64,000 nt of DNA. It comes from Macrostomum lignano (taxonomy: Eukaryota). Shown here in pieces: positions 1-22,490 of this stretch (position 1 is the stretch's first letter; every line of letters starts with the position of its first letter). The notes beneath the pieces were generated by a model that did not search any database, had not been told where the DNA came from, and was given only the letters and a program-made list of their open reading frames with translations. The stretch lies in the NCBI GenBank assembly GCA_002269645.1, contig NIVC01002429.1:110620-174619 (forward strand). Direction: 5' to 3'. A program made the position numbers and the translations under genes.

Positions 1-182
1 CGCGCTTCGTTTAACCAGCGTATGGTGCGTCGCAGATTCCTCTGGCCGAGCTGGTCGCCAGTACTGCTCATGCTGGGCACCCGCATGAAGCCGGGGAACG
101 CCTGCAGTGCGTTGAACATGATCTGGCGCTGTCTGGCCGTCAGCTGCACGCCACCTGCGTTGATTGCGTTTGTCCGCGAGGA
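1..182 (-). CDS. Probable internal coding exon of an unidentified gene continuing off the left edge
   Basis: Acceptor ...ttcaccaag| at 183, then an open GC-rich frame to base 1: SSRTNAINAGGVQLTARQRQIMFNALQAFPGFMRVPSMSSTGDQLGQRNLRRTIRWLNEA. No recognisable domain. Confidence 0.45.
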
Positions 183-272
183 CTTGGTGAAGACAATCAA
201 TAGAGATCGATTGACGGATGGGGAAAGCAGTAAAGGCAGGGTACGAGCGCGTTGTGACAGGATTGGCGAGTG

Positions 273-500
273 ACGGGCTGGGGAAGGGAGTAGGCTAGGT
301 ACATACAGTTGCAGGGGCGAGAGACGGGCTGGGCAAGGAAGGGAGTGGGCTATGTACATACAGTTGGAGGGGCGAGAGACGGGCTGGGGAAGGGAGTAGG
401 CTAGGTACATACAGTTGCAGGGGCGAGAGACGGGCTGGGCAAGGAAGGGAGTGGGCTATGTACATACAGTTGGAGGGGCGAGAGACGAGCTGGGTAAGGG
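273..500. repeat. G-rich minisatellite, about 4 units of ~56-59 bp in two alternating variants
   Basis: GACGGGCTGGG..AAGGGAGT.GGCTA.GTACATACAGTTG.AGGGGCGAGA repeated. Confidence 0.85.
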
Positions 501-2421
501 AGTGGGTATAAAGCTAAAGATCAGGGAGCTAAAGATTAGAGAGTCCAGAGAACCTACAGGTTCTCAGTGGCTTCTACCCTATCTACGTGCATGTAAATAG
601 ATCTACAAAGTGCGTGTAACTAGTACATGTACATGCATTCCTGATTACAAATGTATTTCAGTGATGATAAAGGATCACTGGCTGCATAAAGCGCACAATC
701 AGGCTTAATTCACTTTCCAGAGAATCCCGATCGTACATCTGCAACACCAATAATATAGCTGCTTGACTTTAAATCAGTGCAACAAAATGGGAAGTGCAGG
801 AAAATTTAATAGGCTACAGCACGCGGCTACAATGAAGCTCATTCAGTGCATGCAAATAATATTTCATAAGTTCTATGCAGTTAGTGCATGCTGTACTGTA
901 CTTTTATGTTGGCGCCGTACAATATCGATAAAAAGCAGCACAATTTTCGTAATTAATCAGCTGTGTTTTAATGGTGGGCTATTTCCAGACGTTATACCGT
1001 GTCCATAATTTTTTTCTATAACTTCTATATTTTTTTCAACTGATTTTCGATTAAAGCTGATTATGTTAAATTATTTTATTCATATGGTAATTGGTGCTAT
1101 AGAAAGAGCATTGCATAATTAAAAAAATATGCATAGAATCGTGCTATCCGTAGAATGACTATCCAATTCCATTAAGCTATTTCAACCCTTCCCTTAGGAA
1201 TAGGTGAAGACAATATTTTGTCGCAGGAGTTCAAACCCGGAGATTTAAGATTTGTTTGATTTCGAGTCTAATTTGAACTTTTGCGACCTAATATAGTTCA
1301 TCATAAACGAACTTACAAAACTAAAGCAAGCGTTAAAATAACAGAAATTAAAGTCTTAGCAATATTTATATTTAATTTTAATTATTGTAAATTTATACTG
1401 TACATTTAAGGCATTTCTCTCCCTAGATTTCCGTACTTGTAAATTAAATTTTAAAAGCAAACTACTATAGATTTAGATATCATGTTCTTATACTATTTTA
1501 TTATATTTTACTATCACTGAGGATCCTTAGTTTCTCTTCCAATAATTATTTCCTACAAAATCGACAGTTTAACAACGTCTTTTGTTGAAAGTGAAGCATT
1601 TAATTTTTTTAATTTAGGCGTACTTTTATTTAACATGTTAAGATTAATTCATTTAAATAAAGGCCGATAAAAATTTGATGCAACAAAAGCATTTTTAATA
1701 TAAAAATCACTTAGTACAGGAAACAAAGGAAGTCGATAATTTTCGTGCCAGCCGTGAGCATAAACTGCAGTATCCACTGTTGGGCCAGACTCCCAATACA
1801 TGCATGCAATTTCAGATATTAATGTGTAAAATTAATAACTAATTACAGTTGCCATGCAGATGCAGCTTTGTTATAAAGTTTTTTTCACTTTTAGTTTTAA
1901 AAACACAGCCCAGATAGCAGTATTTATAGAGAACTAGTTGAGGCAAAGCGAAAAAAAATAAAAAAATTATTTCTAAAAATCCATTTTATATGTATAAAAG
2001 CCCAAGAAAATCACGGAGCCGTTAGTTAAGTAATTAATAGGGGCTTGAGAAGACGGTGCGTGATCGCGACGATTCGGCGTGAAGACTTTCTTTGCTGGTT
2101 AATAAGAGTAATTTAGTAAAAACTTCCATTCATAGCGGGAAGATAAAAGCGGCAAACGATTGGGCGAGCAAGTTAAATTCAATCGCATAGAAAACGGTTG
2201 CCAGACAGCAAACTAAAAGGGGGGCTTATCTAGCAAAAAGCAATACAAAAAACCGGCCCGATTAGGCCAGGAAAAACTGAAGGCTAAGACACTGAGCGCG
2301 CACTTCCTACTCTTAGTAGTAGAGGCGTTGCGTTAGCGCGCGGGCAGAGGAAATTATTGGCAGGTAGGGGGAGGGGGCGAGGAAGTCAAATCCGGAGGAG
2401 GGGCGCGGGGGCACAGGTGAG

Positions 2422-2876
2422 TTACTCATCGCGCGGCTCATCGCCTTCCGCTCCCGCCGCGTCATCTGCAGCGGCCGGAGCGGCGGTTTCATTCTCTTCC
2501 TCACCTGGCGCCGCCGCCGCGGCCGCTGACTCTGCGGCCTCAGGTGCCTCAGGCTCCGCTTCAGCTTCGGCCTCGGGCTTATCCTCAGACTCAGGCTCAG
2601 CTTCAGGTTCCGCTTCAGGCTTCGATTCGGCCTCCGGCTCAGCTTCAGGCTGAGGTTCATCAGCTTCAGTCTCCGGCTTAGCCTCATCAGCTTCAGCCTC
2701 GGGTTCAGGCTCAGCCTTAGCCTCCGGTTCAGCCTCGTTCTCGACCGCCGCCGGTTCCGCGGGTTCCTCGCTTTTACCCTCCGCGGGTTCCTCGCTTTCA
2801 CCCTCCGCGGATTTGGCCTCGCCCTGTTCCTGGCCACTCTTGCGCATCTCGGCCACCTCTTTGCGAGCTTGCATGC
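2422..2876 (-). CDS. SPA17-like last coding exon: second half of the final IQ motif plus an E/A/P-rich acidic tail
   Basis: Acceptor ttgtag|GC completes Gly in IQAGFRG-MQARKE. EPEAE low-complexity tail, TAA at 2424-2422. Confidence 0.88.
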
Positions 2877-5800
2877 CTACAAGAATCAAGCAGCGTATTT
2901 TATAATAAAAATCACACTAGCTTTACATTTTGCTTGAAGCCTGTGGAAACGGATAGAGAGTAACGGATACTCACCGCGGAAACCAGCCTGAATTTTGGAA
3001 GCCGCCTGATTCTGAGCCGGATCGTTGGGATCCACGGCATTGGCGGCGTCCGAGTCGGCTTCGCCCTTGGCCTCGTCGGTCTTCTCCTCCTCCTCAGCCG
3101 CGACCGGCTTCTTGAATTGAGAAAAGAAATGAGTTGGTTTTTGGGGAGAGTTCGGGTTCGAGCGTCAAGTGTCGGGGTTTCTGCGGCTAAGGCTGTTTTG
3201 CAGTTTTAGTATAGTGGACTAGCCATTTGCTCCCCCATAAATAAATGCAATCTAAATCTAGAAATTCAGTACTTCCAGATCCATTTAGAAACTGCTTGGG
3301 TGTCATCTCACCGTCTCAGGGCTCGAAGAGGATCTCAGATTAGAGAAGAAGGCGATCATTTTTTTCACCTGTCCGTCTTTTTGACAGCTGGCCATGGCCT
3401 AATAAGTATATTCTCTTATTTAAACCAAGCTAATTCTCGCTAGCAAAAAAGCAGAAAAGGTAAAGGATTTGTTTCGTCTTCTTCTTGTTCCGTGAAGAAA
3501 TCAGCGCTGATAACTAAGCAAAATGCCGCTCTATTGGTTATGAAGTAGATGAGATTTGCATTCACTAAAACCTCGCTCTTTATTGGCCGTCGCAAAAGGA
3601 ACGCCAGAAATGAGGAAAAGGTGCGAAACGAATAGGGCAAACACGGAGCGCGGTGCGCAGTTCTGTGTTTTACAATTTGCAGCAAGAGGAGAGCTTTGAG
3701 TAACAGAGGGAGAGAATGCAGGGGCTAGCATTGGCGCCATATGGCGTATACAATTGAGATTTTTGTGACCTCTACTAATGCATTCGCCCATTAAATGCTC
3801 TAGAAAGCTTGTCTGCAAATAACAAAGCGACTTGGAATTTATTTCTTGTAATTTTTTTAATAATACTACTCTCGTAGTTCGAAAACCTTTTAGTCCTCTC
3901 CCTATTGTCTTTTAAATATGCAAAAAACTATTAAATTTCACGAAGAACACCTTCCGATAATCAGGTAAAGCGCGAAATCACTAAGCGGTTATTGTACTTG
4001 GCTAACAAAAATGCAGTGAAATATTGAGCAGAGAAAGCCATAAAATCCAGTGCCAAGCTTGCCGTTAATAGTTGCAGAAATCTGACTCTTTGTAAAGGGG
4101 CAGGAAAAAACTGACGTTGGTCAAGTTCGAATTCATGAAGCCAGCTTGCGAAATGCAGCAGGTTCTGGCTCCATTTTGTTATAATGAGCTGCGTAATGTT
4201 GTAGGCTGAGAAAATCCGATTTCAGATACAAAAATGCCTCTGTTAGCTTTCAACTAAAGCATATTGTGCGGCGGCTTCTATTGCAAAATTGCGACACAAA
4301 GCGAGGCTTAATAAAAAGTCAAGCCACTCCCGATAATTATGTCAGTAATCCGTTGCGACCTCGAAGTCTCGTGAAGAATCTTCAGCCGCTGATGACTCGA
4401 CGGGCGCAGAAAAAGTCTCATCGACCGGTGAAGACTCAGCTGCAGCTTCATCTGCAGCCTCCTCAACCGGTGAAGACTCAACGGTAGTTTTATCAGCAGC
4501 CTCCTCAACCGGTGAAGACTCAACGGCGGCCTCATCAGCAGCCTCATCAACCGGTGAAGATTCAACTACAGCTTCATCGGCAGCCTCCTCAACCGGTGAA
4601 GACTCAACAATAGCTTTATCAGCAGCCTCATCAACCGGTGAAGACTCAACAATAGCTTCATCAGCATCATACTCAACCGGTGAAGACTCAACTGCAGCTT
4701 CATCAGCAGCCTCCTCAACCAGTGAAGCCTCAACGACGGCTTCATCAGCAGCCTCATCAACCAGTGAAGATTCAACTGCAGCTTCATCAACAGCCTCCTC
4801 AACCGGTGAAGACTCAACAATAGCTTTATCAGCAGCCTCCTCAACCGGTGAAGACTCAACGACGGCTTCATCAGCAGCCTCATCAACCGGTGAAGACTCA
4901 ACAATAGCTTTATCAGCAGCCTCCTCATCAACCGGTGAAGAATCAACAATAGCTTCGTCAGCATCATACTCAACCGGTGAAGACTCAACGGCAGTTTTAT
5001 CAGCAGCCTCATCAACCGGTGAAGAATAAAGTGCAGCTTCATCCGCAGCCTCCTCAATGGGTGAAGACTCAACGTCAGCTTCATCAGCAGCCTTATCAAT
5101 CGGTGAAGACTCAACGTTGGCTTTATCAGCAGCCTCATCAACCGGTGAAGACTCAACAATAGCTTTATCAGCAGCCTCCTCATCAACCGGTGAAGAATCA
5201 ACAATAGCTTCGTCAGCATCATACTCAACCGGTGAAGACTCAACGGCAGTTTTATCAGCAGCCTCATCAACCGGTGAAGAATAAAGTGCAGCTTCATCCG
5301 CAGCCTCCTCAATGGGTGAAGACTCAACGTCAGCTTCATCAGCAGCCTTATCAATCGGTGAAGACTCAACGTTGGCTTTATCAGCAGCCTCCTCAGCAGG
5401 TGCAGACTCGGCAACCACGGCGGTCTGCAGATCTACAGTCTCCTCAACGGGTGCAGACTCGGCAACCACGGCGGTCTGCAGATCTACCGTCTCCTCAACG
5501 GGTGCAGACTCGGCAACCACGGCGGTCTGCAGGTCTACCGTCTCCTCAATGGGTGCAGACTCGGCAACCACGGCGGTCTGCAGATCCGCAACCTCATACT
5601 CATACTCGGTGTCAAAAGTAAGCAAAGCCTCGAATGCAGCCACTTTGTCATTAATTTTTGAGTCAAAGGGGGCTGACTCGGCAATGCTTGTTGGCTGCTT
5701 GATGCTGGGTACCGCACCAGAGGGAAATGGTTGCTAGGGAAAGAGAAATAACGGGGGAAACTTAGAACGCATATAAGCATACCTGCTTACAATTAACAGC

Positions 5801-8800
5801 AAACTTGAGAATATGGAAAATGTGATGTCAGTGGGAACATCTTTGATTTATTAGCCTACCAAGATGCAATAATTTCACACCTCAAGTTTTCTGCAAGAAA
5901 TCTGTAAAGAAACAGAAAATGTCCCATCATGAAGCTTGACCATAATGAAACTGTGACACAATATAGTGTACTTGATTCAGAAATAAACGTTCGTTTTAAT
6001 TTAATAAGCTTCATTTTGGTAAAGAATCATGATAAGCATCACAGTTTTATCAAGGTCAAGTTTCAAAATCGATCCTTCACAAAGTTCTGCAACAAAGTTC
6101 TGAAAGTACATGTAGTTGCGTAACCTTCTGTATTGGCACCAACTTTTGCAAGAAGATGCTTTTAAAACTCGCCAAAGCGTTGCTTGCAACTGAAGAAGTT
6201 GGACGAGAGGTTCGCTTGTAGAAAATTTTTCAAGTGGGGCAGACCAGGGTCGCCTCATGGTTACGAGCTAAAACAAACGGATTAACCAAAGAGGCTTCTA
6301 CCTGGTTAAGTACACGCCTTGGAATCATTGAAAAGTATAAATTATTTACGACAAAAATAGCAAGAAAATATGCAATTTATGGTCTAATAAAGAAAAGGAA
6401 AATTCAAGCAAGAACTGCACTGGTTTCTAACCTCTTCCTCGGCCTCTTTCTGCTCCGCCGCTTCGTCCTGCTGCTCTTGGCCTGTTTCGTCCTTCAGCTT
6501 CTTGCGAGTCTGATAGCCTTTGAAGCCGGCCTGGATCTTGATGGCAGCCTGGGCCAGCTCGGGATCGTTCAGGTCGATCTCCTCCTCTGGGTTCTCCTGC
6601 TAGATGGGGATTGGGAACAAATAGAATACACTGTAGTGAGCTTGCTCATCTCTTGGTTGCACTGAGCTCAGCTACGAGTCTACGACTCAGAATCTACTTA
6701 AGAGCTTAATAACACGTATTTTCAAAATATTACGTTTTTTTCTAAATTACTATTTAGAATGGTATGAGTTTTTGACTAGCTAATGTACATTCTTGATGCT
6801 TTAGAAAGGTAAGGACTATCGACTAGCTAATGTACATTCTTGATGCTTTAGAAAGGTAAGAACTATCGACATGCTAATGTATATTCTTGATGCTTTAGAA
6901 AGATAAGGACTATCTACTAGCTAATGTACATTATTGATGCTTTAGAAAGGTAAGGACTATCGACTAGCTAATGTACATTATTGATGCTTTAGAAAGATAA
7001 GGACTATCTACTAGCTAATGTACATTATTGATGCTTTAGAAAGGTAAGGACTATCCACTAGCTAATTTACATTCTTGATGCTTTAGAAAGGTAAGGACTA
7101 TCGACTAGCTAATGTACATTATTGATGCTTTAGAAAGATAAGGACTATCTACTAGCTAATGTACATTATTGATGCTTTAGAAAGGTAAGGACTATCCACT
7201 AGCTAATGTACATTATTGATGCTTTAGAAAGATAAGGACTATCTACTAGCTAATGTACATTATTGATGCTTTAGAAAGGTAAGGACTATCGACTAGCTAA
7301 TGTACATTATTGATGCTTTAGAAAGATAAGGACTATCTACTAGCTAATGTACATTATTGATGCTTTAGAAAGGTAAGGACTATCCACTAGCTAATGTACA
7401 TTATTGATGCTTTAGAAAGATAAGGACTATCTACTAGCTAATGTACATTATTGATGCTTTAGAAAGGTAAGGACTATCCACTAGCTAATGTACATTATTG
7501 ATGCTTTAGAAAGATAAGGACTATCTACTAGCTAATGTACATTATTGATGCTTTAGAAAGGTAAGGACTATCCACTAGCTAATGTACATTATTGATGCTT
7601 TAGAAAGATAAGGACTATCTACTAGCTAATGTACATTATTGATGCTTTAGAAAGATAAGGACTATCTACTAGCTAATGTACATTATTGATGCTTTAGAAA
7701 GGTAAGGACTATCCACTAGCTAATGTACATTCTTGATGTTTTAGAAAGATAAGGACTATCGACTTGCTAATGTACATTATTGATGCTTTAGAAAGATAAG
7801 GACTATCTACTAGCTAATGTACATTATTGATGCTTTAGAAAGGTAAGGACTATCCACTAGCTAATGTACATTATTGATGCTTTAGAAAGATAAGGACTAT
7901 CTACTAGCTAATGTACATTATTGATGCTTTAGAAAGGTAAGGACTATCCACTAGCTAATGTACATTATTGATGCTTTAGAAAGATAAGGACTATCTACTA
8001 GCTAATGTACATTATTGATGCTTTAGAAAGATAAGGACTATCTACTAGCTAATGTACATTATTGATGCTTTAGAAAGGTAAGGACTATCCACTAGCTAAT
8101 GTACATTCTTGATGTTGTAGAAAGATAAGGACTATCGACTTGCTAATGTACATTATTGATGCTTTAGAAAGGTAAGGACTATCGACTAGCTAATGTACAT
8201 TCTTGATGCATTAGAAGGGAATGAGCTATAGCCTGGCTAATGCACATATAATGCAAAGGTAAGCTTGCTTCATTATACCTGAGGCTCCTCGGCCGCCTGC
8301 TCCTGAGCCTCGTCCTGCTGCTGCGGTTTCTCAGCCTCTTCGCCAGCATCCGGGGCCGCCTCCTTGAATGAAAGCGAGAATTAGGATTAATTTTCATATA
8401 AAGCTGCGCTCTACTCGATACGAAATCAAACTGAGACAAAGACAACAGAGAGAAAACTAGGCTACGTGTGAAAAGTGGAAAATGTTAACAAAATGACAGT
8501 AAAACGAATATTTGGTGAGGTTTAAATTAATATTTTATTAGTAGGGGGGTTACCTTGCTGGCACTCTTGCGACTCAGCGGACCCTTTGACGAGCGCTCTC
8601 GATCGCCAAAGCAACACAGAAGAAATGAGCTCATGCTTCTGAGCCAATAAGTTATCTGAGTCTACACACCACTGGCTTAAGCTATTTGACACTAATTTGT
8701 TTTCTCTGCACAGCTGCACCTTTGTTAATTTGGCGGCAAAAAGTGCACATGCGCCGCCGAGCAATAGCAGGCTTGAGGGTGAGAGTGAGTGAAATATTGG

Positions 8801-11800
8801 AAGCAGGCCAGGAGCGAGAGGCCGAACGCAGAGAGCGTATATTTATGCATTTTATCCGCTGCAGGGTCTCGACTCTCGCCAGCTGAAAACTGTCTGACTT
8901 TTGGAATAGGAGAGCCGCACGGCCTCACCTGTGCGCGCAGGCCCGCTTCAGTTTTCAGAACTTCTCTCTCTCTCTCTCTCACACTCAACCCTGAATGCTG
9001 TATCCATCGGACCTACAGTTTACACACACGCCGGAAGCAGATATTACCAATTGATAAACTTGGGACTTCCGTGTGCAAGTAGTCTGACTTGAACATCCCT
9101 CACTGTAAGATTAGTGATGAGCCTCTTACAGCTGCCAGGTGCACAGTCAGGTGGATGACTTAAAACGGTTTGAATGCGCAGGACCTACTGCAGCGTCGCT
9201 CGTATAAAATTCCAGTCAAGTTCTCCAAAAATAAACCCCGTTGCCTGCTTTCAAATAAACAGCCACTTGTACGGGACTGCCAAATGGAGGCAACTTAGCA
9301 GTTCTTGTGCTGTCAAATTAATAATTCATGGATACTTCTGCTCCAGTTGGACGGTAATCACCACGGAGATTAATTATAGCCTTTTAAGATTTGAGAAGAT
9401 TTGATAGAAGTCTATGCACAGGTGCTGTACAAGAGTGCATAAGCACAGGCAATGTGTACTTTTTGGCAAGGAATTTGCTCTATAGAGTTTCTATGCTCTA
9501 TAGTGAGTTAGTAGCGGTCAATTCTGAGCTCTTGTTGAGTCTTGCAACAAGTTGGCTTAAATTCACGGTTGCTGAAGGTTTGCCTAGAAAAGCACAATGA
9601 ACGAAAAATGCTTTCCAGTGTTAATTAGCGAGCTGTTAATATTGGGATTATGTGAATCTCAACAACACAATGGGACAAAAAACACGGAATAAACTATTAT
9701 CGGTCTCCATGCAGCCTAGAGCTCTTGTTAATAGGCACGAATTGAATTCGCAAACAAAGGAAGGTGATTGAACGATGCAGCATTGAAAGCAAAGCAGGCA
9801 TCCCAAACGCTTTGATAACTACAATGTAACAATACGCATGGTAGATGAACTCTACTCAAGTGCTCCCTGCTTGGTGACTGGCTACCAGGGACCCTGGAAC
9901 TGTGAAAACTTAACTTTGTTTCCTTTTTAATCCAAAAACAAATACTTGTGCGGATTTAAAATTTACTTTTCTCTGTGAAAATCTCTAAAATTTCTCTGAG
10001 TTCAGTCTTCCAGTCCAGGGCAGTTCCAGTTGTCCCTGATAATTACTAAGTCAGTAGTAAAAATGATAAAAGCTAGTACTAATAAAATTGGGACTTAGGA
10101 AACTAAAACAAACTCGGCACTGGGTAAGTGCCAGTGACTGGGAACGCTCGAGCGGCATAGGATACCTTTCCTGTTTCTGCGGAGTTAGCGTCCCCGGAGC
10201 GGGACTTATGGCTGCTCCATCCGCGTTGAATTTTGACAGCAGCCGCCTGCACCTCTGGGTCGTTCAGATCTATATCTACCTCCTCTTCACCGTCCTTGTC
10301 TCTAATCTGTCCCGCGGGCTCTGGAGCAGACTCTTCAACTACATCAGGCTCGCTGACTTCATCAGCTTTCTTAGCCCGAGACTTGTGGCTGCTCCAGCCG
10401 CGTTGTATCTTGACGGCAGCTGCCTGAACCTCTGGGTCTTCCAGATCGATGTCTACCTCTTCTTCATCATTTTTCTTCTCTTCTTCCGCAGTTTCTGGAG
10501 CGCCCTCTTCAGCTGGCTTTGCTGCATCATCTTCATCAGCTTTCTTAGCCCGAGACTTGTGACTGCTCCAGCCGCGTTGTATTTTGACAGCAGCTGCCTG
10601 AACCTCCGGGTCTTCAAGATCAATATCTACTTCTTCTTCAACATTGTCCTTCTTCTCTTCCACAGATTCTTGAGCAGTCTCCTTAACAGCATCATCTTCA
10701 TCTGTCTTATTGGCTCGAGACTTGTGACTGCTCCAACCACGTTGAATCTTGACAGCGGCTGCCTGCACTTCTGGGTCTTCAAGGTCAATATCTACCTGCT
10801 CCTCTTCGGCTTCCTCTTCAACCGGCTCGGGAGCAGTCTGTTCAACTGGCTCAGCTCCATCAGCGTCCTCAGACTTCTTAGAGCGGGACTTGTGGCTGCT
10901 CCAGCCTCGTTGAATCTTAACAGCAGCTGCCTGCACCTCTGGATCCTCCAGATCTATGTCTACTTCCTCTTCTTCATCGTGTTTATTCTCTTCCGCAGAT
11001 TCTGAAGCAGTTTCTTTAACTGGTTCGACAGCTTCATCTTGATCAGTCTTTTTAGCCCGAGACTTGTGGCTGCTCCAGCCTTGTTGAATCTTGACAGCAG
11101 CTGCCTGCACCTCTGGATCTTCCAAATCGATGTCAACCTCTTCCTCTTCCTCAGCGTTTTTCTCAACCGGTTTAGCTTCATCAGCTTCATCAGACTTCTT
11201 AGGGCGGGATTTATGACTGCTCCAGCCTTTCTGAATCTTAACAGCAGCCGCTTGCACCTCTGGGTCTTCCAGATCTATGTCTACCTCTTCCGCAACCCCC
11301 GGGTCCCCTGCCTCGGTCTTGGCAGCAGCGGTGCTTTCATCGGCTGCAGACTGAGCAGCCTCGACGGCTGCTGCTGCTGCCCTCATTGCCTGAAAGCGTC
11401 GCGCAAAAAATGTTCTTGCAGAGTGCGAGTACGCAATGTAGCTTGCAAAAACTAATGCTGTATATTAATTAGCCTTGACACGAACTATTTTTAGCGAAAT
11501 AGACATAATTAGAGTTTAATTATTAGAAAGCAATTGTTAAAAAGCAAAGATGTTAAAAAAACAGTAGCGATGCATGATCATGGGGGTTTACAATAGACAG
11601 TGCCTTATTGTGATCCGCTCATGTATTGACAGCTTATGTGGTAATTTAAATTGAAAATCCAGCTCACCTCTCGCTTGGCCTTCATATCCTTTCGGGTGCG
11701 GTAGCCCTTGTAGCCGGCCTGTATTTTCACGGCCGCCTCTTCCAATTCGTCCTTGGATGGGCCCTCGATGATTTTCTGTCGGGAGAGAGTTGAGAGTGCA

Positions 11801-14800
11801 CATTTGATTGGTTATTTATTGTTGAGATGACTGCTATATGTGCAAGAGACCGCTGTCGGGGAGCAGCAATAGCTGCTTGAACTCAATATTATGGATCGAG
11901 GTGGTACAGACATCTTTAATGACAGTTCACAGCCATTTTTACCCAAATCAGTATTACAGTAAACAAAAAATGAGCTGTAGAAATAGTAAAAGTCCCAACA
12001 AACTGCCATGAATCAAATCGGAATCCAAAAATTCGGGAATATAAATGATTAAATTAACTTTAAAAAAATATTTTAAGGGTTCAATCGTGCTTTCATTAAG
12101 CCAATAGGATTCATTTCCGTAAATAGGCTTATGGAAAGCTCTGCCTTCATTTACATTAGAGAACGTCCATATATGGAAATGAATACATTTTACTCTGAGC
12201 CATTCATTGCAAAGTAATCAACTTATGCTGCAAATTATCTAGAGCAAACAGCGCACAAATCCAAGTGAAACAGCGAAGATAACCTCATTTACAATCGCTG
12301 GCATTGTTATTTATATATTTCTTGATGTCTGACTGCATAAATACTTTGGCGTGGTAAGAAAGAGTAAGACGTGCATGGGCAAATAAAAATAAATAATATT
12401 TAAAGAGGTTAGAAGCGACCAAAGTCAACTGCAAAACTAATTGGGACCAGAAACGCAGACAGCAGATTGGGTACTTGGCGGTGTTCACGCGGTCCACACC
12501 CACACGCAAACTGCAACAAACCAAACCGGGCTGTAGGCTCCCCTTTGCGTTGCCAAGCATCTCAGAATGAATATACATGTAAATACCGGCGTATGTGCGC
12601 AAATTTGTACCGACTATTTTGGGCACAAATGTTAATAATAATAGCATCACAATTCGTATTCGAATTCGGCTACAACTCTGCCAACTCTGTGTTTACTTTA
12701 GCTTGGTAGCAAACGCTTCGCTTGATACCAAACCGCCCGAACGCATTATTCTCTTCGCTCCCCGATGCCAATGAGTAGTAAGTAAAGCATTTAAATGCGC
12801 AGATAGTAGCAGTTTCACAAATCAGTTTAGATAAGCCGTGAGATTCAATTAACTATGCAAGTTCAGACTTGCAATTTCCACCGTTTCGCCTTGTTTATAC
12901 AACCGATTACAACCAAGCACAGATTACGCAGAACGGGAGCAAGTAACTCATGAGTTTTGGCTTTGCGACCATGATAGCTTTTGGTCTAGGGGGAAGCTAA
13001 AGGGTAGGCTGGATTGATAATGCGGGTAAATTGAAGCTTGAGATTGAGACTTGTTGATTATTCGCACCTTGGCTAAGCGCTGGATTGGCCAACGTCCTCC
13101 ACCCCATCCTCACCCGCATTCGCTCCTCTCTGTCGTGAAACTCCTGCCTCGCTTCGGCTTCTCGCGTCTGGCGGTCGTAGAACCAGTCGGAGAATTTGAC
13201 AGGCGACGGGGGCCCATTCGACGGTGGCGAGAACTGGCGCGGCAGTGACTGCACCGTCGCTCGGTGCGGCGATTTCGGTGCGGCTCTGCTGGCCGGCTGC
13301 GTCTCAGCCTCGTCGCCGCCGTCTTTACCGACCACGCCACCATTCTCGGGCTTCGCGGCCAAGTATCGCTTCTTCAAAGAAGCCCATCTGTCGGCGTAGT
13401 TAATATTGTCTTGCTTGCGGAGGAAATCATACCGACTCATTGTGGCCGCCTTTTTAATATTGCCCGGCTTTGGTGGCGCCTGGTGCATGCTCTGGGACCT
13501 AGTCACAGTAATGGTCTCGGTGACCTCCGATGGCACCTCTGTTGCTGTCTTATCCGCATCCGGTTGACTCGGTGACTCGATAGTTATCTGAGGTGTCACG
13601 CGCACTTGTTTGTTGTCTACAGTCTTACTGGCCGCAGGTGTGGGAGTCCGATCATTTTCACCGGTTTTCGAGCTAGCCTTCGGCTCAGGAGCATTGCTCT
13701 TTCCGCTTTTGCCGCCCGGCTTTGCAGCATCCTTGTTCTTCTTCTTGCGTCGACCGAAACAGCCCAGCATAGTTTGGCTTTAGACGAATTTCGTTGCCTC
13801 GTGCCTTTGTTAAGAGAATGAAGCTCTATGGAGAGCGCAAAGATCACCTGTCGATTGATGAGTAAATAGCGTCAGAAAATGCTGCCAACCTAGCCGCAGA
13901 AGAGGCTGCGCGCCGAGCTTAGCAACAAGAAATCAAGATGGGGTTGCTTGCCACTCGCCGCTAGCGCACTAGAGCCTGGTGTACAATGCCGGCATCCAGC
14001 CAGGCCAGCCAATGACGAACAAGGAACCGAGAACTGACGTTATCGTAGAGGAGATATCGCACACACAATGAACGATTAGCTTGTTGCCAAACTGACTGGA
14101 CAGGAGCAGTGACAAAGCGCTTGCGCCAAAGCTAAAATTCTGCGCAAATTTGCAGACAGCCACCCGGCTGAGGAGGGCTTACAGTCCAGGCAGAAGGAAA
14201 GTGTTTCACTACCTCTTCTAGTGCAGCTCTTTCCCTGCAACCAACGCGAGCTGAGCAAAGTGGGGCGGGTGCAGCGCTTTACTGTCTTCTGCTTTGGAAC
14301 TCCTCTTCTTTTGCTTTGGCTTCTGTCTTCTGGTTGTGTCTTCTGCTTTTTTATAAAAAAAGTCGAACCAGCAGACCAATATGCAGCGTTCCGCAGAGCA
14401 GTTGAGTTGAATTGGCAAGAGCGGTTTGCTCCTGGGGCTCCGAATGAAGCGTTCTTCTTCTCTGTCTCTCTCTATTCTCTTTTTAGTTCTTGTTTGTGCA
14501 AATTTGTACAGCTCTGTTCTCTCACACACTCCGCTCTCTCCTCTCTCTCTCCTTGCATGCTTGTAGAACTCGATCTATGCCCAGCGACCAGTGGTGTAGG
14601 TGCTGCGCTGCGGTCTTCTTGGGAGGCGAGGGAGGATGGGTTGGCGCCGGCCAAGTGCGCCGGTACTGCGCAATAAAGAACTCAAGGTCTCGGAGGGGGC
14701 CCAGCCCGGTATATACCAGCCTCACCTCGCAGTCACAGCTCGTACTTGCCAGCCCGTTTCTAAGTGTCCATTTATACAAGATACGCATTAGTGTATATAG

Positions 14801-17800: not shown

Positions 17801-19462
17801 TGAAGAGACCATGACACTCTTGAAGAAACCCTGACACTCTTAAAGAAACCCTGACACCCTTGAAGAGACCCTGGCACTCTTGAAGAAACCCTGACACTCT
17901 TAAAGAGACCCTGACACCCTTGAAGAGACCCTGGCACTCTTGAAAAGACCCTGACACCCTTGGAGAGACTCTGACACCCTTGAAGAGACCCTGGCACTCT
18001 TGAAAAGACCCTGGCACCCTTGGAGAGACCTCTAAACCCTCATGGAGAGCCTGACACCGTTATCAAGTCTTACACTTACCACTTCCTCAGCCGATCCCTG
18101 TTCGGGAGCCGATTGTCTGTAAAATGGAAAGCCAATTCAAACTTTAAATGATGATTTGACATCCGATTTTTCCTAGCTGTGCTCTGCACTACGACCTACG
18201 CATGTACTACTGCTGCTGCTCGGGAATCACTAGCCAATAGTGATGCATTTAGAAACTCGAACTAAAAGAGGCGGCCAGATTGATGGCGGATACGGTAAGA
18301 TTGAGTTGCAGAAATTGGACAGGGCGCCGTCTCTTTCTCGCGGAGGCTGAGTTGTCTGGATCGATCGAAGGAATTAGCGAGGGGCGGCAGAGGGAGAACG
18401 AACGAGCAGTTCTGATTAATAATGCTATAAGCTTAACTCTGACTTAATCTGGTTTGCACTTTTTCGTCATAAAGTCTGCGCGACCTTTCTATATGAGATG
18501 CTGGCTGATTTACAAAGAATTATTCAGTTGGGAGAATTGCCCGCCCAGGCGTTATGAACCTGTGTCTGACTCCGAGACAGACAAGCCAGCAGTTAACCAA
18601 ACAGACGTGAAAATAACTAAGACACATAGTGTAAAGAGACTGAGACCCCAAGACAGACACTGAAACAGGCAGACAAGCAAACGCCAAGACAGACAGTAGT
18701 GAAAGGTGGACACTAAGACAGCAGACACTAAGACATCAGGATAGGGGGACACTAGGACAGACAGACACCAGGACACAGACACCAGGGCAAGTTAGACACT
18801 AGGACAGGCAGAAACCAGGACAGGCAGACACCAGGACAGGCAGACACCAGGACAGACAGATATTAGGACAGGCAGACACCAGGACAGGCAGACACCAGGA
18901 CAGGCAGACACCAGGACAGGCAGATATCAGGGCAGACAGACACCAGGACAGACAGACACCAGGACAGACAGACACCAGGACAGGCAGACACCAGGACAGG
19001 CAGACACTAGGACAGGCAGACACCAGGACAGGCAGACACCAGGACAGACAGACTGTGCACCCACTTGATGGCTTCGCGCTCCTGGTGGCCGCGCACAGCA
19101 GACTGGATCTCGCTGGCCGCCTTGTCCTCGCGCAATTTGGCGGCCTCCTTTTGCGCCGCGTGCCGCCTAAAATTGGTCTGGATGACCTTGGAGGCGTCCT
19201 GCTGCTGCGGGTCGGATGGGTCGATGGTGGGCTGCTGGAAGGAGGTGTTGTTGTAGAACCTGTCCTCGACTTTGGCAGCCAGTTGGGCCGGATCGTCGTC
19301 GCCAGTTTCCTCGCGTCGGCGGATCAACTCCTCGAAGTACATGGCGCCGAAGGTGTAGATGTCGGCTGGCTGGGAGCGAAGCACCTCGCGGGCGAGGCCC
19401 TCCAGGAGTGATTGAAATCCGCGAGGAACACGGAGCTTCGTGCTGCTGAACGGTACTGACAT
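2422..19462 (-). CDS. SPA17: SPA17/Sp17-like protein: RIIa dimerisation/docking domain plus 13 IQ or IQ-like motifs in acidic spacers (946 aa in the 10-exon model)
   Basis: Exons (minus strand): 19462-19065, 18116-18080, 17026-16883, 11775-11668, 11389-10166, 8362-8279, 6599-6432, 3398-3312 (optional), 3110-2975, 2876-2422. All introns are GT-AG, phases are compatible, and the total is 2841 nt = 947 codons. The N-terminus MSVPFSSTKLRVPRGFQSLLEGLAREVLRSQP...KVEDRFYNN matches the vertebrate Sp17 N-terminus (MSIPFSNTHYRIPQGFGNLLEGLTREILREQP...KVEDRFYNN) from memory. Confidence 0.88.
2975..3110 (-). CDS. SPA17-like exon carrying the first half of the final IQ motif
   Basis: ttcaag|AAG...QAASKIQAGFRG|gtgagt; phase 0 in, phase 1 out; 136 nt. 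Confidence 0.88.
3312..3398 (-). CDS. Short exon (A)MASCQKDGQVKKMIAFFSNLRSSSSPET: cassette exon or alternative start
   Basis: ttattag|GCC ATG G... ACG|gtgaga; 87 nt, phase 0 to phase 0. Confidence 0.55.
4342..5733 (-). CDS. Alternative terminal exon of the SPA17-like locus: acidic 14-aa (VESSPVEEAADEAA) and 20-aa repeats, 463 aa
   Basis: Strong acceptor tttctctttccctag|CAA at 5733, phase 0 and in frame with ORF 4342..5643; TGA at 4344-4342; AATAAA on the minus strand at 3843-3838. Confidence 0.7.
   Translation of the reverse strand, partial: QPFPSGAVPSIKQPTSIAESAPFDSKINDKVAAFEALLTFDTEYEYEVADLQTAVVAESAPIEETVDLQTAVVAESAPVEETVDLQTAVVAESAPVEETVDLQTAVVAESAPAEEAADKANVESSPIDKAADEADVESSPIEEAADEAALYSSPVDEAADKTAVESSPVEYDADEAIVDSSPVDEEAADKAIVESSPVDEAADKANVESSPIDKAADEADVESSPIEEAADEAALYSSPVDEAADKTAVESSPVEYDADEAIVDSSPVDEEAADKAIVESSPVDEAADEAVVESSPVEEAADKAIVESSPVEEAVDEAAVESSLVDEAADEAVVEASLVEEAADEAAVESSPVEYDADEAIVESSPVDEAADKAIVESSPVEEAADEAVVESSPVDEAADEAAVESSPVEEAADKTTVESSPVEEAADEAAAESSPVDETFSAPVESSAAEDSSRDFEVATDY
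6432..6599 (-). CDS. SPA17-like exon with a canonical IQ motif (EIDLNDPELAQAAIKIQAGFKGYQTRKK)
   Basis: NAGNAG acceptor tag|cag, donor GAG|gttaga; 168 nt, phase 0 to phase 0. Confidence 0.88.
6776..8205. repeat. 47-bp intronic satellite, ~30 copies, with alternating variants
   Basis: CTAGCTAATGTACATTATTGATGCTTTAGAAAG(G/A)TAAGGACTATC(C/T/G)A; first two copies start at 6776 and 6823. Confidence 0.95.
8279..8362 (-). CDS. SPA17-like acidic linker exon (EAAPDAGEEAEKPQQQDEAQEQAAEEPQ)
   Basis: tttcattcaag|GAG...CAG|gtataa; 84 nt, phase 0 to phase 0. Confidence 0.85.
8554..8634 (-). CDS. Alternative first coding exon MSSFLLCCFGDRERSSKGPLSRKSASK (di-Cys N-terminus)
   Basis: ATG at 8634-8632, exactly 27 codons, donor AAG|gtaacc in phase 0, compatible with the 8362 acceptor. 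Not in the ORF track. Confidence 0.65.
8928..9000 (-). promoter_or_regulatory. Putative internal promoter or non-coding first exon (GA-rich, ending in CAG|GTGAGG)
   Basis: (GA)n tract followed by a consensus donor at 8928, about 300 nt upstream of the MSSFLLCC start. Confidence 0.35.
10166..11389 (-). CDS. SPA17-like large exon with 7 tandem IQ-like repeats (VDIDLEDPEVQAAAVKIQRGWSSHKSR)
   Basis: tttcag|GCA ATG...AAG|gtatcc; 1224 nt = 408 codons, phase 0 to phase 0; matches ORF 10103..11386. Confidence 0.9.
11668..11775 (-). CDS. SPA17-like IQ exon (KIIEGPSKDELEEAAVKIQAGYKGYRTRKDMKAKRE)
   Basis: ctcccgacag|AAA...GAG|gtgagc; 108 nt, phase 0 to phase 0. Confidence 0.88.
13114..13770 (-). CDS. 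Alternative first coding exon MLGCFGRRKKKNK... (219 aa, basic and Ser/Pro-rich)
   Basis: ORF 12997..13770 has an internal phase-0 donor CGG|gtgagg at 13113 compatible with the 11775 acceptor. A 5'-UTR acceptor lies near 13848 and a GA-rich tract near 14550. If unspliced it is a nested 257-aa gene. Confidence 0.65.
16883..17026 (-). CDS. SPA17-like IQ exon (DIDLNDPEVEAAAAKIQAGFKGYKTRKD)
   Basis: actgcag|GAC...TCT|gtaagc; 144 nt, phase 0 to phase 0. Confidence 0.9.
17105..18050. repeat. Degenerate ~19-20-bp intronic minisatellite
   Basis: GAGACCC(A/T)GACAC(C/T)CTTGAA and variants. Confidence 0.9.
18080..18116 (-). CDS. SPA17-like 37-nt micro-exon ((K)QSAPEQGSAEEV)
   Basis: ttttacag|A...GTG|gtaagt; converts phase 2 to phase 0, exactly bridging exon 1 and the 17026 exon. 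Confidence 0.82.
18775..19050. repeat. 16-bp intronic minisatellite
   Basis: GGACAGGCAGACACCA repeated. Confidence 0.9.
19065..19462 (-). CDS. SPA17: SPA17 first coding exon: RIIa domain plus two IQ motifs
   Basis: gccATG at 19462; IQTNFRRHAAQK and IQSAVRGHQER; donor AA|gtgggt at 19064. Confidence 0.92.
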
Positions 19463-20801
19463 GGCTGGTGGATAGTTGCTGTAACATGCAATGATGATTA
19501 AAATTTACCGTTTAAGATTTCTTTAGCCTCTGATGGTCTCTGACAGATATTTAAACAGTAATTGTAAAGTTGCATTATGGGCTGGACCAGAAGCAATTTT
19601 GAATGTGCTTGGACACAGACTAATATTGGAAATCTGGTAAAAAATAGTTAAGAATTCAATTCACTACACATAGTTAATAAATACAAATCATAAGTGCTAC
19701 TGATTATAAAAAAATACTGACTGTTCTATTGACTAAAAAACTATTAAAAGTAGCTTTGTATATTTCTTTACTATTTTTAAAAACCCTATTGCTTATAAAA
19801 AGTCCTCTTTAAATGCTTAGCTATATAATAAAAAAGGTATTTAGAAGCCATTAATTTGGTTTTGTTAGATTTACAGATAAGTAAATATCTTAAGGATTGC
19901 TAGCAGAACAGCTGACTTGTAGCAGGCAAGCAATAAAAAATGAAAGAGGAAAATACATCATAAAAACTCATTTCATGTTAGCCTTGATGGCTGATGCTAA
20001 GATTAAGTAAAACATTAATAATTAAAAGTGAACAATACAATGTACTTTTCCTAAGCCACTAATTAAAGCAAATAGTTTTTATAAATCAGATATAAGATGT
20101 AATTCAGGGTATCCATAAGCCCAGGGGAGCCAAATTAACTTATTATTGCTAAATTTAAAATCCATTAGTATGCTACAAATACTTGCTACTGATTATTTAA
20201 TGACAAAAAGTCAATAAATTTATCACCATAGTTAATGTATAATTTTTTCTGTTGCTGTGATCAATGGATTACATATTTTATCGCTTCTATTTTAATACAT
20301 GGGACAAAACTTCACCTAAAACTTTTAATTCAGTAATTAAGATTATAAGAAAACTGAGTAACAGTTTTTCAAAAAAAGTTATATAAAGATCAAAACCCGA
20401 AAAATGAGCATACAGTAGAAATAGATACGCTTGTAAGTAACCTAGACATGTAAAAAACTGTTTTAATAATATTTCTTGCAAGTTTTTTGATAAAAAATAC
20501 ACAATAAGAAAACCAATCTGAAAGACATGATCGAGACATTCTCGAAATGCAACTCTACTAATCATAAAATCCTGTAACTTAACAAGGATAAAAATTTTCT
20601 CGGAAAGGTCAGTTACCGTGGTGATTACCTTGGCAGTCAAGAAGACACAAATTTCTATTCTTAATAAAGACTTTTCGCAATGAAATTAACCTTAAACAAG
20701 TTGTACTTGAACGAAACAATCAAGTAGCTAATGTTTTTTGCAGCAAAGGATCAATTTTTGTTTATTCGTTTTATTTTCCCAAACCGTAAGTAAAATACTT
20801 A

Positions 20802-22291: not shown

Positions 22292-22490
22292 CTACTCAAG
22301 TAACATATACAGGACGCTACACTCGAAATCTAAAGTAAATATTTTGAAGGCAACTTTTCGCCGAAAAATACACTACAGAGATAGGGGGGTTTAACTTTTT
22401 CAGCACAAAAATTGTTAGTGCTTTTGATAGGAGGCAGATCCGGTGTTCATCTTTTAATATGTTGTGTCTTTCTTATTGCTCTATCGATAT

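What the first reader, a model, noticed from the sequence alone, without database searches (positions are those of the whole stretch)
8554..8634. Hidden 27-codon di-cysteine start exon creates a ~307-aa GAP-43-like isoform
The exon is too short for the ORF track. ATG AGC TCA TTT CTT CTG TGT TGC TTT GGC... runs exactly 27 codons to AAG|GTAACC. Splicing to the exons starting at 8362, 6599, 3110 and 2876 gives 924 nt (307 aa): CC motif, basic stretch, acidic linker, two canonical IQ motifs and an E/A/P tail. A GA-rich tract and an upstream donor at 8928 suggest its own promoter. The GAP-43 comparison is at the architecture level; sequence homology is not claimed.
Basis: partly seen in the sequence, partly recalled or inferred. 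Interest (0 to 1): 0.75.

Follow-up and report, generated by a model that had tools for sequence, protein, structure and literature searches.

The report
Possible lipid-anchor start exon in flatworm
Inside a flatworm gene for a sperm/cilia-type calmodulin-binding protein sits a tiny unannotated exon that could start a shorter, membrane-anchored version resembling the neuronal proteins GAP-43 and neurogranin; sequence statistics favour it being real, but no transcript evidence could be obtained here.

Summary
The window is Macrostomum lignano (NIVC01002429.1). The finding lies on the minus strand, in an intron of the SPA17-like RIIa/multi-IQ gene Mlig011073.g1 (PAA57957.1).

All sequence facts hold. 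ATG 8634 runs 27 codons to AAG|GTAACC at 8554. Splicing to 8362, 6599, 3110 and 2876 gives 924 nt (307 aa). Those four exons are real annotated exons (100% match).

ORF, donor and phase together are not beyond chance: 37-68% of shuffles produce an equivalent. No public protein model uses the exon.

Its peptide start (LLCCFGDRER) is far beyond chance. It resembles the N-terminus M-x-GCFG-[KR][KR]KKK of a Macrostomum family of IQ proteins. One family start exon lies 5 kb upstream in the same gene (13770). The candidate ranks second of 809 ATG-ORFs in the window. No chance ORF in about 2,200 comes near it, and composition-matched shuffles give p about 5e-5.

The amphioxus orthologue has two short Cys-rich alternative first exons in the same relative position.

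The two IQ modules match PCP4 and neurogranin acidic/IQ modules at sequence level. Pfam Neuromodulin does not hit.

Verdict: probably (about 0.5) a genuine unannotated alternative first exon giving an acylated, RIIa-less calpacitin-like isoform. RNA evidence is still required.

The parts
8554..8634 (-). Candidate alternative first coding exon: ATG + 26 codons, MSSFLLCCFGDRERSSKGPLSRKSASK, phase 0 end
   Evidence: sequence and phases. (N-terminal motif beyond chance). Identical in paralogous copy L001. Absent from all public protein models.
8552..8553 (-). Candidate donor GT (AAG|GTAACC)
   Evidence: It lacks +5 G, so it is outside the GT[GA]AG majority class (PMC8629364). Other donors of this gene are also atypical: GTATAA, GTTAGA, GTGGGT.
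8639..8640 (-). Weak AG acceptor 4 nt before the ATG (ggctcag|AAGC ATG). It could be a cis acceptor for the 8928 donor or an SL trans-splice site.
   Evidence: It matches only CAG of the YTNCAG trans-acceptor motif. The SL terminal ATG would be out of frame.
8929..8990 (-). Putative non-coding leader exon with (GA)n tract, ending in consensus donor CAG|GTGAGG (GT at 8928-8927). The 5' end is unknown.
   Evidence: It lies in a GC-richer island about 9030-8554 (50-57% GC, against 33-42% upstream). Function is inferred only.
8279..8362 (-). Exon D (EAAPDAGEEAEKPQQQDEAQEQAAEEPQ), annotated exon
   Evidence: 100% match to PAA57957.1.
6432..6599 (-). Exon E, first acidic/IQ module (EEEIDLNDPELAQAAIKIQAGFKGYQTRKKLK)
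   Evidence: 15/21 identical to the GAP-43 IQ in 4E53. Aligns to neurogranin.
2975..3110 (-). Exon F, start of second acidic/IQ module
2422..2876 (-). Exon G: end of second IQ, E/A/P-rich acidic tail, stop TAA 2424-2422
13114..13770 (-). Validated family-type start exon MLGCFGRRKKKNKD... (219 aa, ends ERMR|GTGAGG in phase 0; would join exon C)
   Evidence: HMMER scan: conserved N-terminus of PAA86897.1, PAA65130.1, A0A1I8HAI6 and Logan transcripts. Used in UniProt model A0A1I8GWL3.
19065..19462 (-). Exon A of the annotated isoform: RIIa domain start MSVPFSSTKLRVPRGF... (replaced in the proposed isoform)
11668..11775 (-). Exon C (IQ), the exon that normally splices to exon D across the intron holding the candidate

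Best explanation
8634-8554 (minus strand) is a genuine but unannotated alternative first coding exon of the Macrostomum lignano SPA17-like RIIa/multi-IQ gene. Transcription from an internal start (or trans-splicing) in the C-D intron would join its 27 codons to exons D-G. This replaces the RIIa docking domain and three IQ exons with a short N-terminus, MSSFLLCCFGDRER... The hydrophobic di-Cys followed by a net-basic Ser/Lys/Arg stretch is inferred to be S-palmitoylated and to tether the protein to membranes. The two acidic/IQ modules are inferred to bind (apo-)calmodulin as PCP4, neurogranin and GAP-43 do, and the E/A/P tail is disordered. The product would be a membrane-anchored calmodulin buffer ('calpacitin-like'). 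It would be a second, shorter version of the acylated isoform started by the conserved MLGCFGRRKKK exon at 13770. Shown: the sequence anatomy, the reality of exons D-G, the non-random N-terminal motif, and the precedent in orthologues. Inferred: transcription, splicing, palmitoylation and calmodulin binding.
For: (1) ATG, open frame, phase-0 donor and phase-0 exon D fit exactly. There is an in-frame TAG 10 codons upstream, A at -3, and no other ATG between 8749 and 8634. (2) The N-terminus resembles the invariant core (GCFG + basic) of a Macrostomum IQ-protein family. It is 2nd of 809 ATG-ORFs in the window, behind only the true family start at 13770 (30.2, against 14.4 for the next). The maximum among 1,388 control ORFs in L003-L005 is 18.8, and composition-matched shuffles give P=5e-5. 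(3) The same gene holds a validated acylation-type start exon. (4) The amphioxus orthologue has two short Cys-rich alternative first coding exons between the RIIa exon and the IQ exons: MGSCSS..|gtagga and MCGCTSS|gtaaac. (5) Exons D-G are annotated exons with two Pfam IQ motifs. Their modules match neurogranin in pairwise comparison (E=8e-8); the family's module (amphioxus repeat + exon B of this gene) matches PCP4 (E=3.8e-5). (6) There is no difference from the 98.4%-identical paralogous copy over 8798-8385, where the noncoding rate is about 1/79 nt (weak). (7) A GC-richer island with a consensus donor lies upstream.
Against: No public protein or transcript-derived record contains the exon, although the index used is demonstrably lossy. 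All three public models of the locus skip it. ORF + donor + phase alone are at chance level. Codon-usage score is -9.2, inside the intronic distribution and far below the gene's exons; the test is confounded by the E/A/K-rich training set. The donor GTAACC is non-consensus. The basic cluster after CFG is weak (DRER vs RRKKK). There is no alignable similarity to family start exons beyond about 10 residues, at protein or DNA level. Diverged paralogous genes have no counterpart. If the 8638 acceptor were SL trans-spliced, the SL AUG would open an overlapping out-of-frame uORF. The F/L/C-rich peptide is encoded by a T-rich tract that could instead be a polypyrimidine tract.
Confidence: 0.5

Rival explanations
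1. Chance ORF. The 27 codons are an accidental open frame in the C-D intron, and the CCFG resemblance to the family N-terminus is coincidence. The only products of the locus are those that skip it.
For: Shuffles give >=1 equivalent ATG..GT[AG]A phase-0 ORF of >=27 codons in 37-68% of cases. Other introns contain similar ORFs at 17757-17674 and 3395-3312. Codon usage is intron-like. No database record contains it. The donor is non-consensus. No homology is seen beyond the motif.
Against: The motif score is an extreme outlier (z about 5.7). None of about 2,200 other ATG-ORFs exceeds 18.8 against 30.2, and composition-matched P=5e-5. It lies in the same gene and strand as the true family start.
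Confidence: 0.27
2. It is an internal cassette exon, not a start exon. The T-rich tract TCATTTCTTCTGTGTTGCTTT is a polypyrimidine tract feeding an AG inside the ORF. This gives an in-frame micro-exon 8595-8554 (42 nt, RSSKGPLSRKSASK) or 8583-8554 (30 nt) inserted between exons C and D. Alternatively, the 85-nt version (8638-8554) is a frameshifting 'poison' exon.
For: AG at 8597-8596 and at 8585-8584 lie on codon boundaries of the same frame (read directly). The 85-nt version gives a stop in exon D. This would explain the retained donor and the conservation without needing a promoter.
Against: No model or protein contains such an insert. It leaves the ATG, the upstream in-frame stop and the significant CFG-motif resemblance unexplained.
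Confidence: 0.1
3. It is an evolutionary relic: a former or duplicated acylation-type start exon that is no longer transcribed or spliced, and too young or too short to have accumulated disabling mutations.
For: Motif-level resemblance to the family start without a strong polybasic cluster (DRER instead of RRKKK). No counterpart in other family genes. No expression record.
Against: ATG, open frame, phase and GT are all intact in both genomic copies. There is no DNA similarity to suggest a recent duplication, so an old relic should have decayed.
Confidence: 0.1

Closest known systems
GAP-43 / neuromodulin (vertebrates)
   Same: Architecture: a very short first coding exon carrying a di-Cys palmitoylation motif next to basic residues, an IQ calmodulin-binding motif, and an acidic E/A/P-rich disordered tail. 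The exon-E IQ is 15/21 identical to the GAP-43 IQ in PDB 4E53. GAP-43 is palmitoylated on Cys3/Cys4 (PMC7494789).
   Different: No Pfam Neuromodulin/Neuromodulin_N hit. There are two IQ modules instead of one. The Cys pair is at 7-8 in a hydrophobic FLLCCF context. The PKC-target Ser inside the IQ (IQASFRG) is Gly here (IQAGFKG / IQAGFRG). It is produced as an isoform of an RIIa gene rather than from its own gene.
Neurogranin and PCP4/PEP-19 (calpacitins with an acidic/IQ module)
   Same: The family's module matches PCP4 [23 protein letters not shown] (PDB 2N77, E=3.8e-5; query was an amphioxus-type repeat plus exon B of this gene, not exons E-G). Neurogranin also starts with a di-Cys (MDCC).
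   Different: Those are single-module proteins of 62-78 aa from separate genes. Here there are two modules plus a long acidic tail, and the N-terminus differs. Orthology was not tested.
Drosophila igloo (GAP-43-related, Neel & Young 1994, cited in PMC9618489)
   Same: Invertebrate, N-terminally acylated protein with multiple IQ motifs, counted among the calpacitins.
   Different: Igloo is myristoylated at Gly2 (own knowledge). Here there is no Gly2, so only S-acylation is possible. No sequence comparison with igloo was run.
SPA17 (sperm surface protein 17) and the invertebrate RIIa + multi-IQ orthologues
   Same: The host gene is this family. It has the RIIa N-terminus MSVPFSSTKLRVPRGF... plus IQ motifs. 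Sp17 structures are hit by the IQ region (9FQR, 8J07).
   Different: The proposed isoform lacks the RIIa domain that defines SPA17, so it could not dock to AKAP-type helices.
Amphioxus RIIa-less isoforms of the same gene (B. belcheri isoform X3 MCGCTSS..., B. lanceolatum isoform X2 MGSCSSKDD...)
   Same: Short Cys-containing alternative first coding exons lie inside the gene, downstream of the RIIa exon. They end in phase 0 and join the IQ exons. This is the same design as proposed here.
   Different: Different peptides (a myristoylation-type MGxC, and MCGC). They are annotated by RefSeq, whereas the flatworm exon is unannotated. There is no sequence similarity between the start exons.
Macrostomum 'GCFG-start' IQ proteins (PAA86897.1, PAA65130.1, A0A1I8HAI6; window exon 13770)
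   Same: The N-terminal core x-C-F-G followed by Arg/Lys, then IQ modules. The candidate is the only other ORF with this core in about 2,200 tested.
   Different: The family has a strong polybasic run (RRKKK) and a conserved ~200-aa region (RYDFLRK..., SLPRQFSPPS..VKFS.WFY). Both are absent from the 27-codon exon.

Membership tests
GAP-43/neuromodulin family | Match to Pfam Neuromodulin_N / Neuromodulin models | tested here: not met
   hmmscan of the 307-aa product at E<=1 returns only PF00612 IQ.
GAP-43/neuromodulin family | N-terminal Cys pair in a short first exon, next to basic residues (palmitoylation/membrane targeting) | tested here: inconclusive
   CC at residues 7-8 with R12, R14, K17, R22, K23, K27 is present in the sequence. 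Whether it is acylated cannot be tested here.
GAP-43/neuromodulin family | IQ motif with the PKC-target Ser (IQASFRGH) | tested here: not met
   Both IQ cores read IQAGFKGY / IQAGFRGM, with Gly in place of Ser.
Calpacitin-type acidic/IQ module (PCP4, neurogranin) | Acidic D-I-D-x-x-x-P-E stretch immediately N-terminal to an IQ core | tested here: met
   Exon E EEEIDLNDPELAQAAIKIQAGF and exon F/G VDPNDPAQNQAASKIQAGF are read directly and align to neurogranin (E 8e-8, pairwise). The family's module (amphioxus repeat + exon B) hits PCP4 2N77 at E=3.8e-5.
Calpacitin-type acidic/IQ module (PCP4, neurogranin) | Binds apo-calmodulin and tunes its Ca2+ kinetics | not testable with these tools
   Needs a binding assay.
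SPA17-like RIIa + IQ proteins | N-terminal RIIa dimerisation/docking domain (PF02197) | tested here: not met
   Met for the annotated product of the gene (E=1.6e-12). Absent from the proposed 307-aa isoform.
SPA17-like RIIa + IQ proteins | Best homologues are RIIa + multi-IQ proteins of other bilaterians | tested here: met
   Hits to mollusc, annelid, amphioxus and sea-urchin RIIa+IQ proteins, E 1e-65 to 1e-21.
Macrostomum GCFG-start IQ proteins | N-terminus M-x(1,2)-G-C-F-G-[KR]-[KR]-K-K | tested here: inconclusive
   Core L-C-C-F-G-D-R-E-R: CFG and one Arg match, but the polybasic run does not. The score is 30.2, against 55-58 for members and <=18.8 for chance.
Macrostomum GCFG-start IQ proteins | Conserved ~200-aa region after the N-terminus (RYDFLRK.., SLPRQFSPPS..VKFS.WFY..) | tested here: not met
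   Absent. BLASTP of exon 1+D against the 13770 exon finds nothing.
Expressed alternative first exon (any gene) | Transcript with the exon spliced to the next exon | not testable with these tools
   No RNA data were reachable. Exact and word-based protein look-ups were negative.

The most novel reading that the evidence does not exclude
Bilaterian SPA17-like RIIa/multi-IQ genes are dual-purpose loci. Besides the RIIa-bearing ciliary/sperm protein, internal promoters with very short Cys-rich first exons produce lipid-anchored, RIIa-less calmodulin buffers. The flatworm has two such exons (13770 and 8634) and amphioxus has two. The vertebrate calpacitins (neurogranin, and by genome duplication GAP-43 and PCP4) would descend from that internal isoform by gene fission. 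Two observations are consistent with this. The acidic/IQ module is shared at sequence level. Nrgn lies in the same small locus as Siae/Spa17 in mouse and human (PMC4098794, PMC4642301). I found no paper stating this in the library searched.
Probability: 0.3. Interest if true: 0.7.

Novelty: new member of a known kind. Interest (0 to 1): 0.42.

Why it matters
If real, the exon adds an unannotated product to a model regenerative flatworm: a membrane-anchored calmodulin-binding protein of the GAP-43/neurogranin/igloo type, made from a gene otherwise annotated only as an RIIa (SPA17-like) protein. Together with the conserved MLGCFGRRKKK start exon in the same gene and the two Cys-rich alternative first exons in the amphioxus orthologue, it suggests a general design: one bilaterian locus produces both a docking-domain ciliary protein and an acylated calmodulin buffer. 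That would make the origin of the vertebrate calpacitins directly testable. It also shows how gene models that keep one isoform per gene hide very short first exons.

Tried and rejected
(1) Exact look-up of the 307-aa product: not in the 15-billion-protein collection.

(2) Word-index search with exons 1-3 returned only one unrelated-species IQ protein. It failed even to return PAA57957.1, so this negative is weak.

(3) Paralogue comparison. The only close copy (L001) is 98.4% identical and has no change in 8798-8385. P(max gap >= 413) is roughly 0.1, so this is uninformative.

(4) Search for a counterpart exon in the diverged family genes L003 and L004. There was only a chance SFLLCCY in a T-rich intron with no ATG.

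(5) DNA similarity between the 8634 region and family start exons: none. BLASTP: none.

(6) Codon-usage likelihood: intron-like, but the training set is E/A/K-rich, so it is confounded.

(7) Rfam scan of 8000-10200: nothing credible.

(8) SL trans-splicing at 8638: the acceptor matches only CAG of YTNCAG, and the SL AUG would be out of frame. This is neither supported nor excluded.

(9) Literature: no paper mentions Mlig011073, Mlig023834, Mlig019204 or Mlig003552, and no supplement was held.

(10) Signal peptide or transmembrane reading of FLLCCF: rejected by inspection, because the hydrophobic run is only about 6 residues.

(11) Structure prediction was not run. The product is predicted to be disordered apart from the IQ helices, so a model would not discriminate between the hypotheses.
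Full report
WHERE WE ARE. The window is 100% identical over the 20 kb compared (window 1-20000) to Macrostomum lignano contig NIVC01002429.1 (assembly GCA_002269645.1). M. lignano is a free-living flatworm and a hidden polyploid (PMC10468722, abstract seen). The finding lies on the minus strand, inside a gene annotated as BOX15_Mlig011073g1 (PAA57957.1, P0001, 511 aa). Pfam finds an RIIa domain and five IQ motifs in that protein. Its best homologues are RIIa + multi-IQ proteins of molluscs, an annelid, amphioxus and a sea urchin. All start with MAVPFSNTKLRVPRGF..., the SPA17 type of N-terminus.

Mapping P0001 back to the window gives these exons:
- A: 19462-19065
- A2: about 18116-18078
- B: 17026-16883
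- C: 11775-11668
- D: 8362-8279
- E: 6599-6432
- F: 3110-2975
- G: 2876-2422

The candidate exon sits in the 3.3-kb C-D intron.

CHECK OF THE OBSERVATION.
- ATG at 8634 is followed by 27 codons (MSSFLLCCFGDRERSSKGPLSRKSASK), ending AAG|GTAACC at 8554.
- Joined to exons D-G it gives 924 nt and 307 aa. Every exon is flanked by AG and GT and every phase fits.
- The product has two Pfam IQ motifs (E=5e-11) and an E/A/P-rich tail.
- The (GA)n tract and the CAG|GTGAGG donor at 8928 are there.
- An in-frame TAG lies 10 codons upstream of the ATG, -3 is A, and there is no other ATG between 8749 and 8634.

IS IT MORE THAN CHANCE? There are two separate answers.

The gene-structure features are not. The exon is the only ATG-to-GT[AG]A phase-0 ORF of >=8 codons in the C-D intron. 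However, dinucleotide shuffles of the intron give 0.6-1.6 such ORFs of >=27 codons, and 37-68% of shuffles have at least one. Other introns of the gene contain comparable accidental ORFs, for example 17757-17674 and 3395-3312. A codon-usage log-likelihood (-9.2) lies within the intronic distribution and far below the gene's exons (+26 +/- 12). That test is confounded because the training exons are E/A/K-rich. The only close genomic copy (L001, 98.4% identical) has no difference between 8798 and 8385, where the noncoding rate is about 1 per 79 nt. This is only weakly informative.

The peptide content, in contrast, is far from random. A full HMMER scan with the neighbouring ORF 13770-13114 (minus strand) showed that its start, MLGCFGRRKKKNKD, is the conserved N-terminus of a Macrostomum family of IQ proteins:
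- PAA86897.1: MLGCFGRRKKKTKHD
- PAA65130.1: MPFGCFGKRKKQ
- A0A1I8HAI6: MPFGCFGKRKKKDKS
- two Logan-derived proteins

I built a 12-residue scoring matrix from the five members that come from other loci or species, and scored every ATG-ORF open for >=20 codons.
- In the window (809 ORFs, both strands), 13770 scores 56.2, the candidate 8634 scores 30.2 and the next scores 14.4. The mean is -4.3 with SD 6.1.
- In control loci L003, L004 and L005 (1,388 ORFs), only the true family starts score >=55. The best chance ORF reaches 18.8.
- Shuffling the candidate's own 57 nt, including a version that keeps its T-rich half T-rich, reaches 30.2 in 1 of 20,000 stop-free shuffles.
- Only two of 987 ATG-ORFs in the window have CFG in their first 13 residues, namely 13770 and 8634.

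The resemblance is confined to about 10 residues (L-x-C-F-G-x-R). BLASTP and blastn find nothing further. The strong polybasic run of the family (RRKKK) is replaced by DRER.

CONTEXT THAT BEARS ON THE INTERPRETATION.
(i) The locus already has one well-supported acylation-type start exon, at 13770. It ends ERMR|GTGAGG in phase 0 and would join exon C. The UniProt model A0A1I8GWL3 includes it. The family genes at L003 and L004 have no RIIa exon within 10 kb upstream.
(ii) In the amphioxus orthologue (L005), the RIIa start is at 6001. Two short alternative first coding exons lie inside the gene: MGSCSSKDDIQVSRGSLPRDK|gtagga at 10827 and MCGCTSS|gtaaac at 19128. The first common exon is at 29897. 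These exons correspond to RefSeq isoforms X2 and X3 (P0012, P0011). So short Cys-rich first exons that swap out the RIIa domain are a recurring feature of this gene family.
(iii) M. lignano trans-splices about 30% of its genes to a 35-nt leader ending in ATG. Trans-acceptors show YTNCAG, and GT[GA]AG was found at about 65% (122,399 of 187,627) of the regions around cis-splice sites analysed (PMC8629364). The AG 4 nt upstream of the candidate ATG (ggctcag|AAGC) matches only CAG. The leader's ATG would be out of frame, giving an overlapping uORF. The candidate donor GTAACC is in the minority class, but so are several confirmed donors of this gene (GTATAA, GTTAGA, GTGGGT).
(iv) A strong acceptor exists at 8772|8771, but an exon starting there would carry a 22-codon uORF. 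The 5' structure therefore remains open.

WHAT THE PRODUCT WOULD BE. The two IQ regions are not generic.
- Each has an acidic D-L-N-D-P-E type stretch directly before the IQ core.
- A query made of an amphioxus-type repeat and exon B of this gene has PCP4/PEP-19 as its best solved-structure match (2N77, E=3.8e-5). Exons E-G themselves were not part of that query.
The pairwise E-values are 5e-9 to 8e-8. It aligns to amphioxus P0012 likewise.
- The exon-E core AAIKIQAGFKGYQTRKKLKDE is 15/21 identical to the GAP-43 IQ in 4E53, but the E-value is only 0.1.
- Pfam Neuromodulin models do not hit.
- The Ser that PKC phosphorylates in GAP-43 and neurogranin (IQASFRG) is Gly in both modules.

The most accurate description is therefore a calpacitin-like protein. 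The calpacitin family is GAP-43, neurogranin, PEP-19 and igloo (PMC9618489). The product would have an S-acylation-type N-terminus, two acidic/IQ calmodulin-binding modules and an acidic disordered tail. The GAP-43 comparison holds at the level of architecture. GAP-43 is palmitoylated on Cys3/4 (PMC7494789). Family membership is not met.

MECHANISM PROPOSED (inferred steps marked).
1. Internal transcription start or trans-splicing in the C-D intron (inferred).
2. Splicing of 8554 to 8362 (inferred; phases shown).
3. Translation from the 8634 ATG (inferred; it is the first AUG for any 5' end between 8749 and 8635, shown).
4. S-palmitoylation of Cys7/Cys8, aided by the flanking F/L residues and the net +4 stretch (inferred by analogy).
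5. Calmodulin binding by the two acidic/IQ modules (inferred from sequence similarity to PCP4 and neurogranin).

The outcome would be a membrane-tethered calmodulin buffer that lacks the RIIa docking domain of the long isoform.

RIVALS.
- Chance ORF, 0.27. This fits the structural statistics and the lack of records. It does not fit the motif statistics.
- Internal cassette, 0.10. The T-rich tract encoding FLLCCF could be a polypyrimidine tract for AGs at 8597-8596 or 8585-8584. These would give in-frame 42-nt or 30-nt micro-exons (RSSKGPLSRKSASK / GPLSRKSASK). The 85-nt version from 8638 frameshifts to a stop in exon D.
- Relic exon, 0.10.

I put the alternative-first-exon reading at about 0.5.

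NOVELTY AND VALUE. No public model of the locus contains the exon: not PAA57957.1, PAA59467.1 or A0A1I8GWL3. If real, it is a new member of a known kind: an acylated IQ isoform produced from an alternative first exon. The wider and more interesting reading is that SPA17-like loci generally encode both an RIIa protein and acylated calpacitin-like isoforms, and that vertebrate neurogranin, GAP-43 and PCP4 derive from the latter. [quoted passage not shown] It has not been tested phylogenetically.

LIMITS. None of the tools reaches M. lignano RNA data or other Macrostomum genomes. The word-indexed protein search failed to return a protein that shares 84 identical residues with the query, so its negative result carries little weight. 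The decisive evidence is junction reads, which are straightforward to obtain from existing public data.

Noticed in passing
window 13114-13770 (-): A 219-codon exon starting MLGCFGRRKKKNKD and ending ERMR|GTGAGG in phase 0. It is the conserved N-terminus of a Macrostomum-specific family of IQ proteins (PAA86897.1, PAA65130.1, A0A1I8HAI6). It strikingly resembles the GAP-43 start MLCCMRRTKQVEKND (recalled from memory). The NCBI model of this locus skips it, while UniProt A0A1I8GWL3 uses it as an internal exon.
   Followed up: yes
window 10103-11386 (-): A 427-codon ORF with about 7 tandem 58-aa repeats, EEVDIDLEDPEVQAAAVKIQRGWSSHKSR. This is a variant acidic/IQ module with W-S-S-H in place of F-K-G-Y. 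A phase-0 donor AAG|GTATCC lies near 10166. The NCBI model skips it, and A0A1I8GWL3 uses it in part. It is probably a large alternative exon.
   Followed up: partly
window 4342-5733 (-): An open frame of 463 codons that begins at a good acceptor (ccctag|CAACC) in phase with exon E and ends in a stop. It is built of 42-nt (14-aa) tandem units (about 23.5 copies, also detected at 255-nt period) of the type SSPVDEAADKAIVE. It is a candidate alternative 3'-terminal exon giving a different acidic tail.
   Followed up: partly
window 6775-8216: A 47-bp minisatellite of about 31 copies (94% matches) fills most of the D-E intron. The paralogous copy L001 has a much shorter array (about 390 nt).
   Followed up: partly
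window 3312-3395 (-): Another ATG mini-ORF, MASCQKDGQVKKMIAFFSNLRSSSSPET|GTGAGA, with an earlier donor after 9 codons. It is phase 0 and lies just upstream of phase-0 exon F, so it would give a one-IQ product. It does not score on the family motif and is probably chance.
   Followed up: partly
L005 10827 and 19128 (Branchiostoma belcheri KV412261.1): Two short alternative first coding exons of the amphioxus SPA17-like multi-IQ gene. MGSCSSKDD... has a myristoylation + palmitoylation type start, and MCGCTSS is only 7 codons. Both lie downstream of the RIIa start.
   Followed up: yes
PDB search: The acidic pre-IQ string EEEVDIDLDDPEI occurs almost verbatim in vertebrate TRPM3 channels (residues about 610-632 of several cryo-EM entries). 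This is an unexpected match for the repeat unit of this gene family.
   Followed up: no
window 21803-23803 (-): ORFs of 146 and 352 aa (e.g. ...KKSAPWWNPELGALRRRARTLQRRALK...) that look like fragments of a non-LTR retrotransposon. The identification is by eye only.
   Followed up: no
window 51221-51751 (+): An ORF with consecutive C2H2 zinc fingers (YSCPVCCKCFSNHSNLMRHKRVHSGARPFQCVVCAKAFSQSNNLYQHQIIHTGRRPYICRLC...), likely an exon of a zinc-finger gene.
   Followed up: no
window 27.8-31.1 kb, 42.4-43.9 kb, 53.5-54.2 kb, 57.8-60.7 kb: Long simple or tandem repeat arrays that generate spurious long ORFs in several frames (e.g. SIYL, SVSQ, DRQT, VNMVTSP repeats). None looks coding.
   Followed up: no
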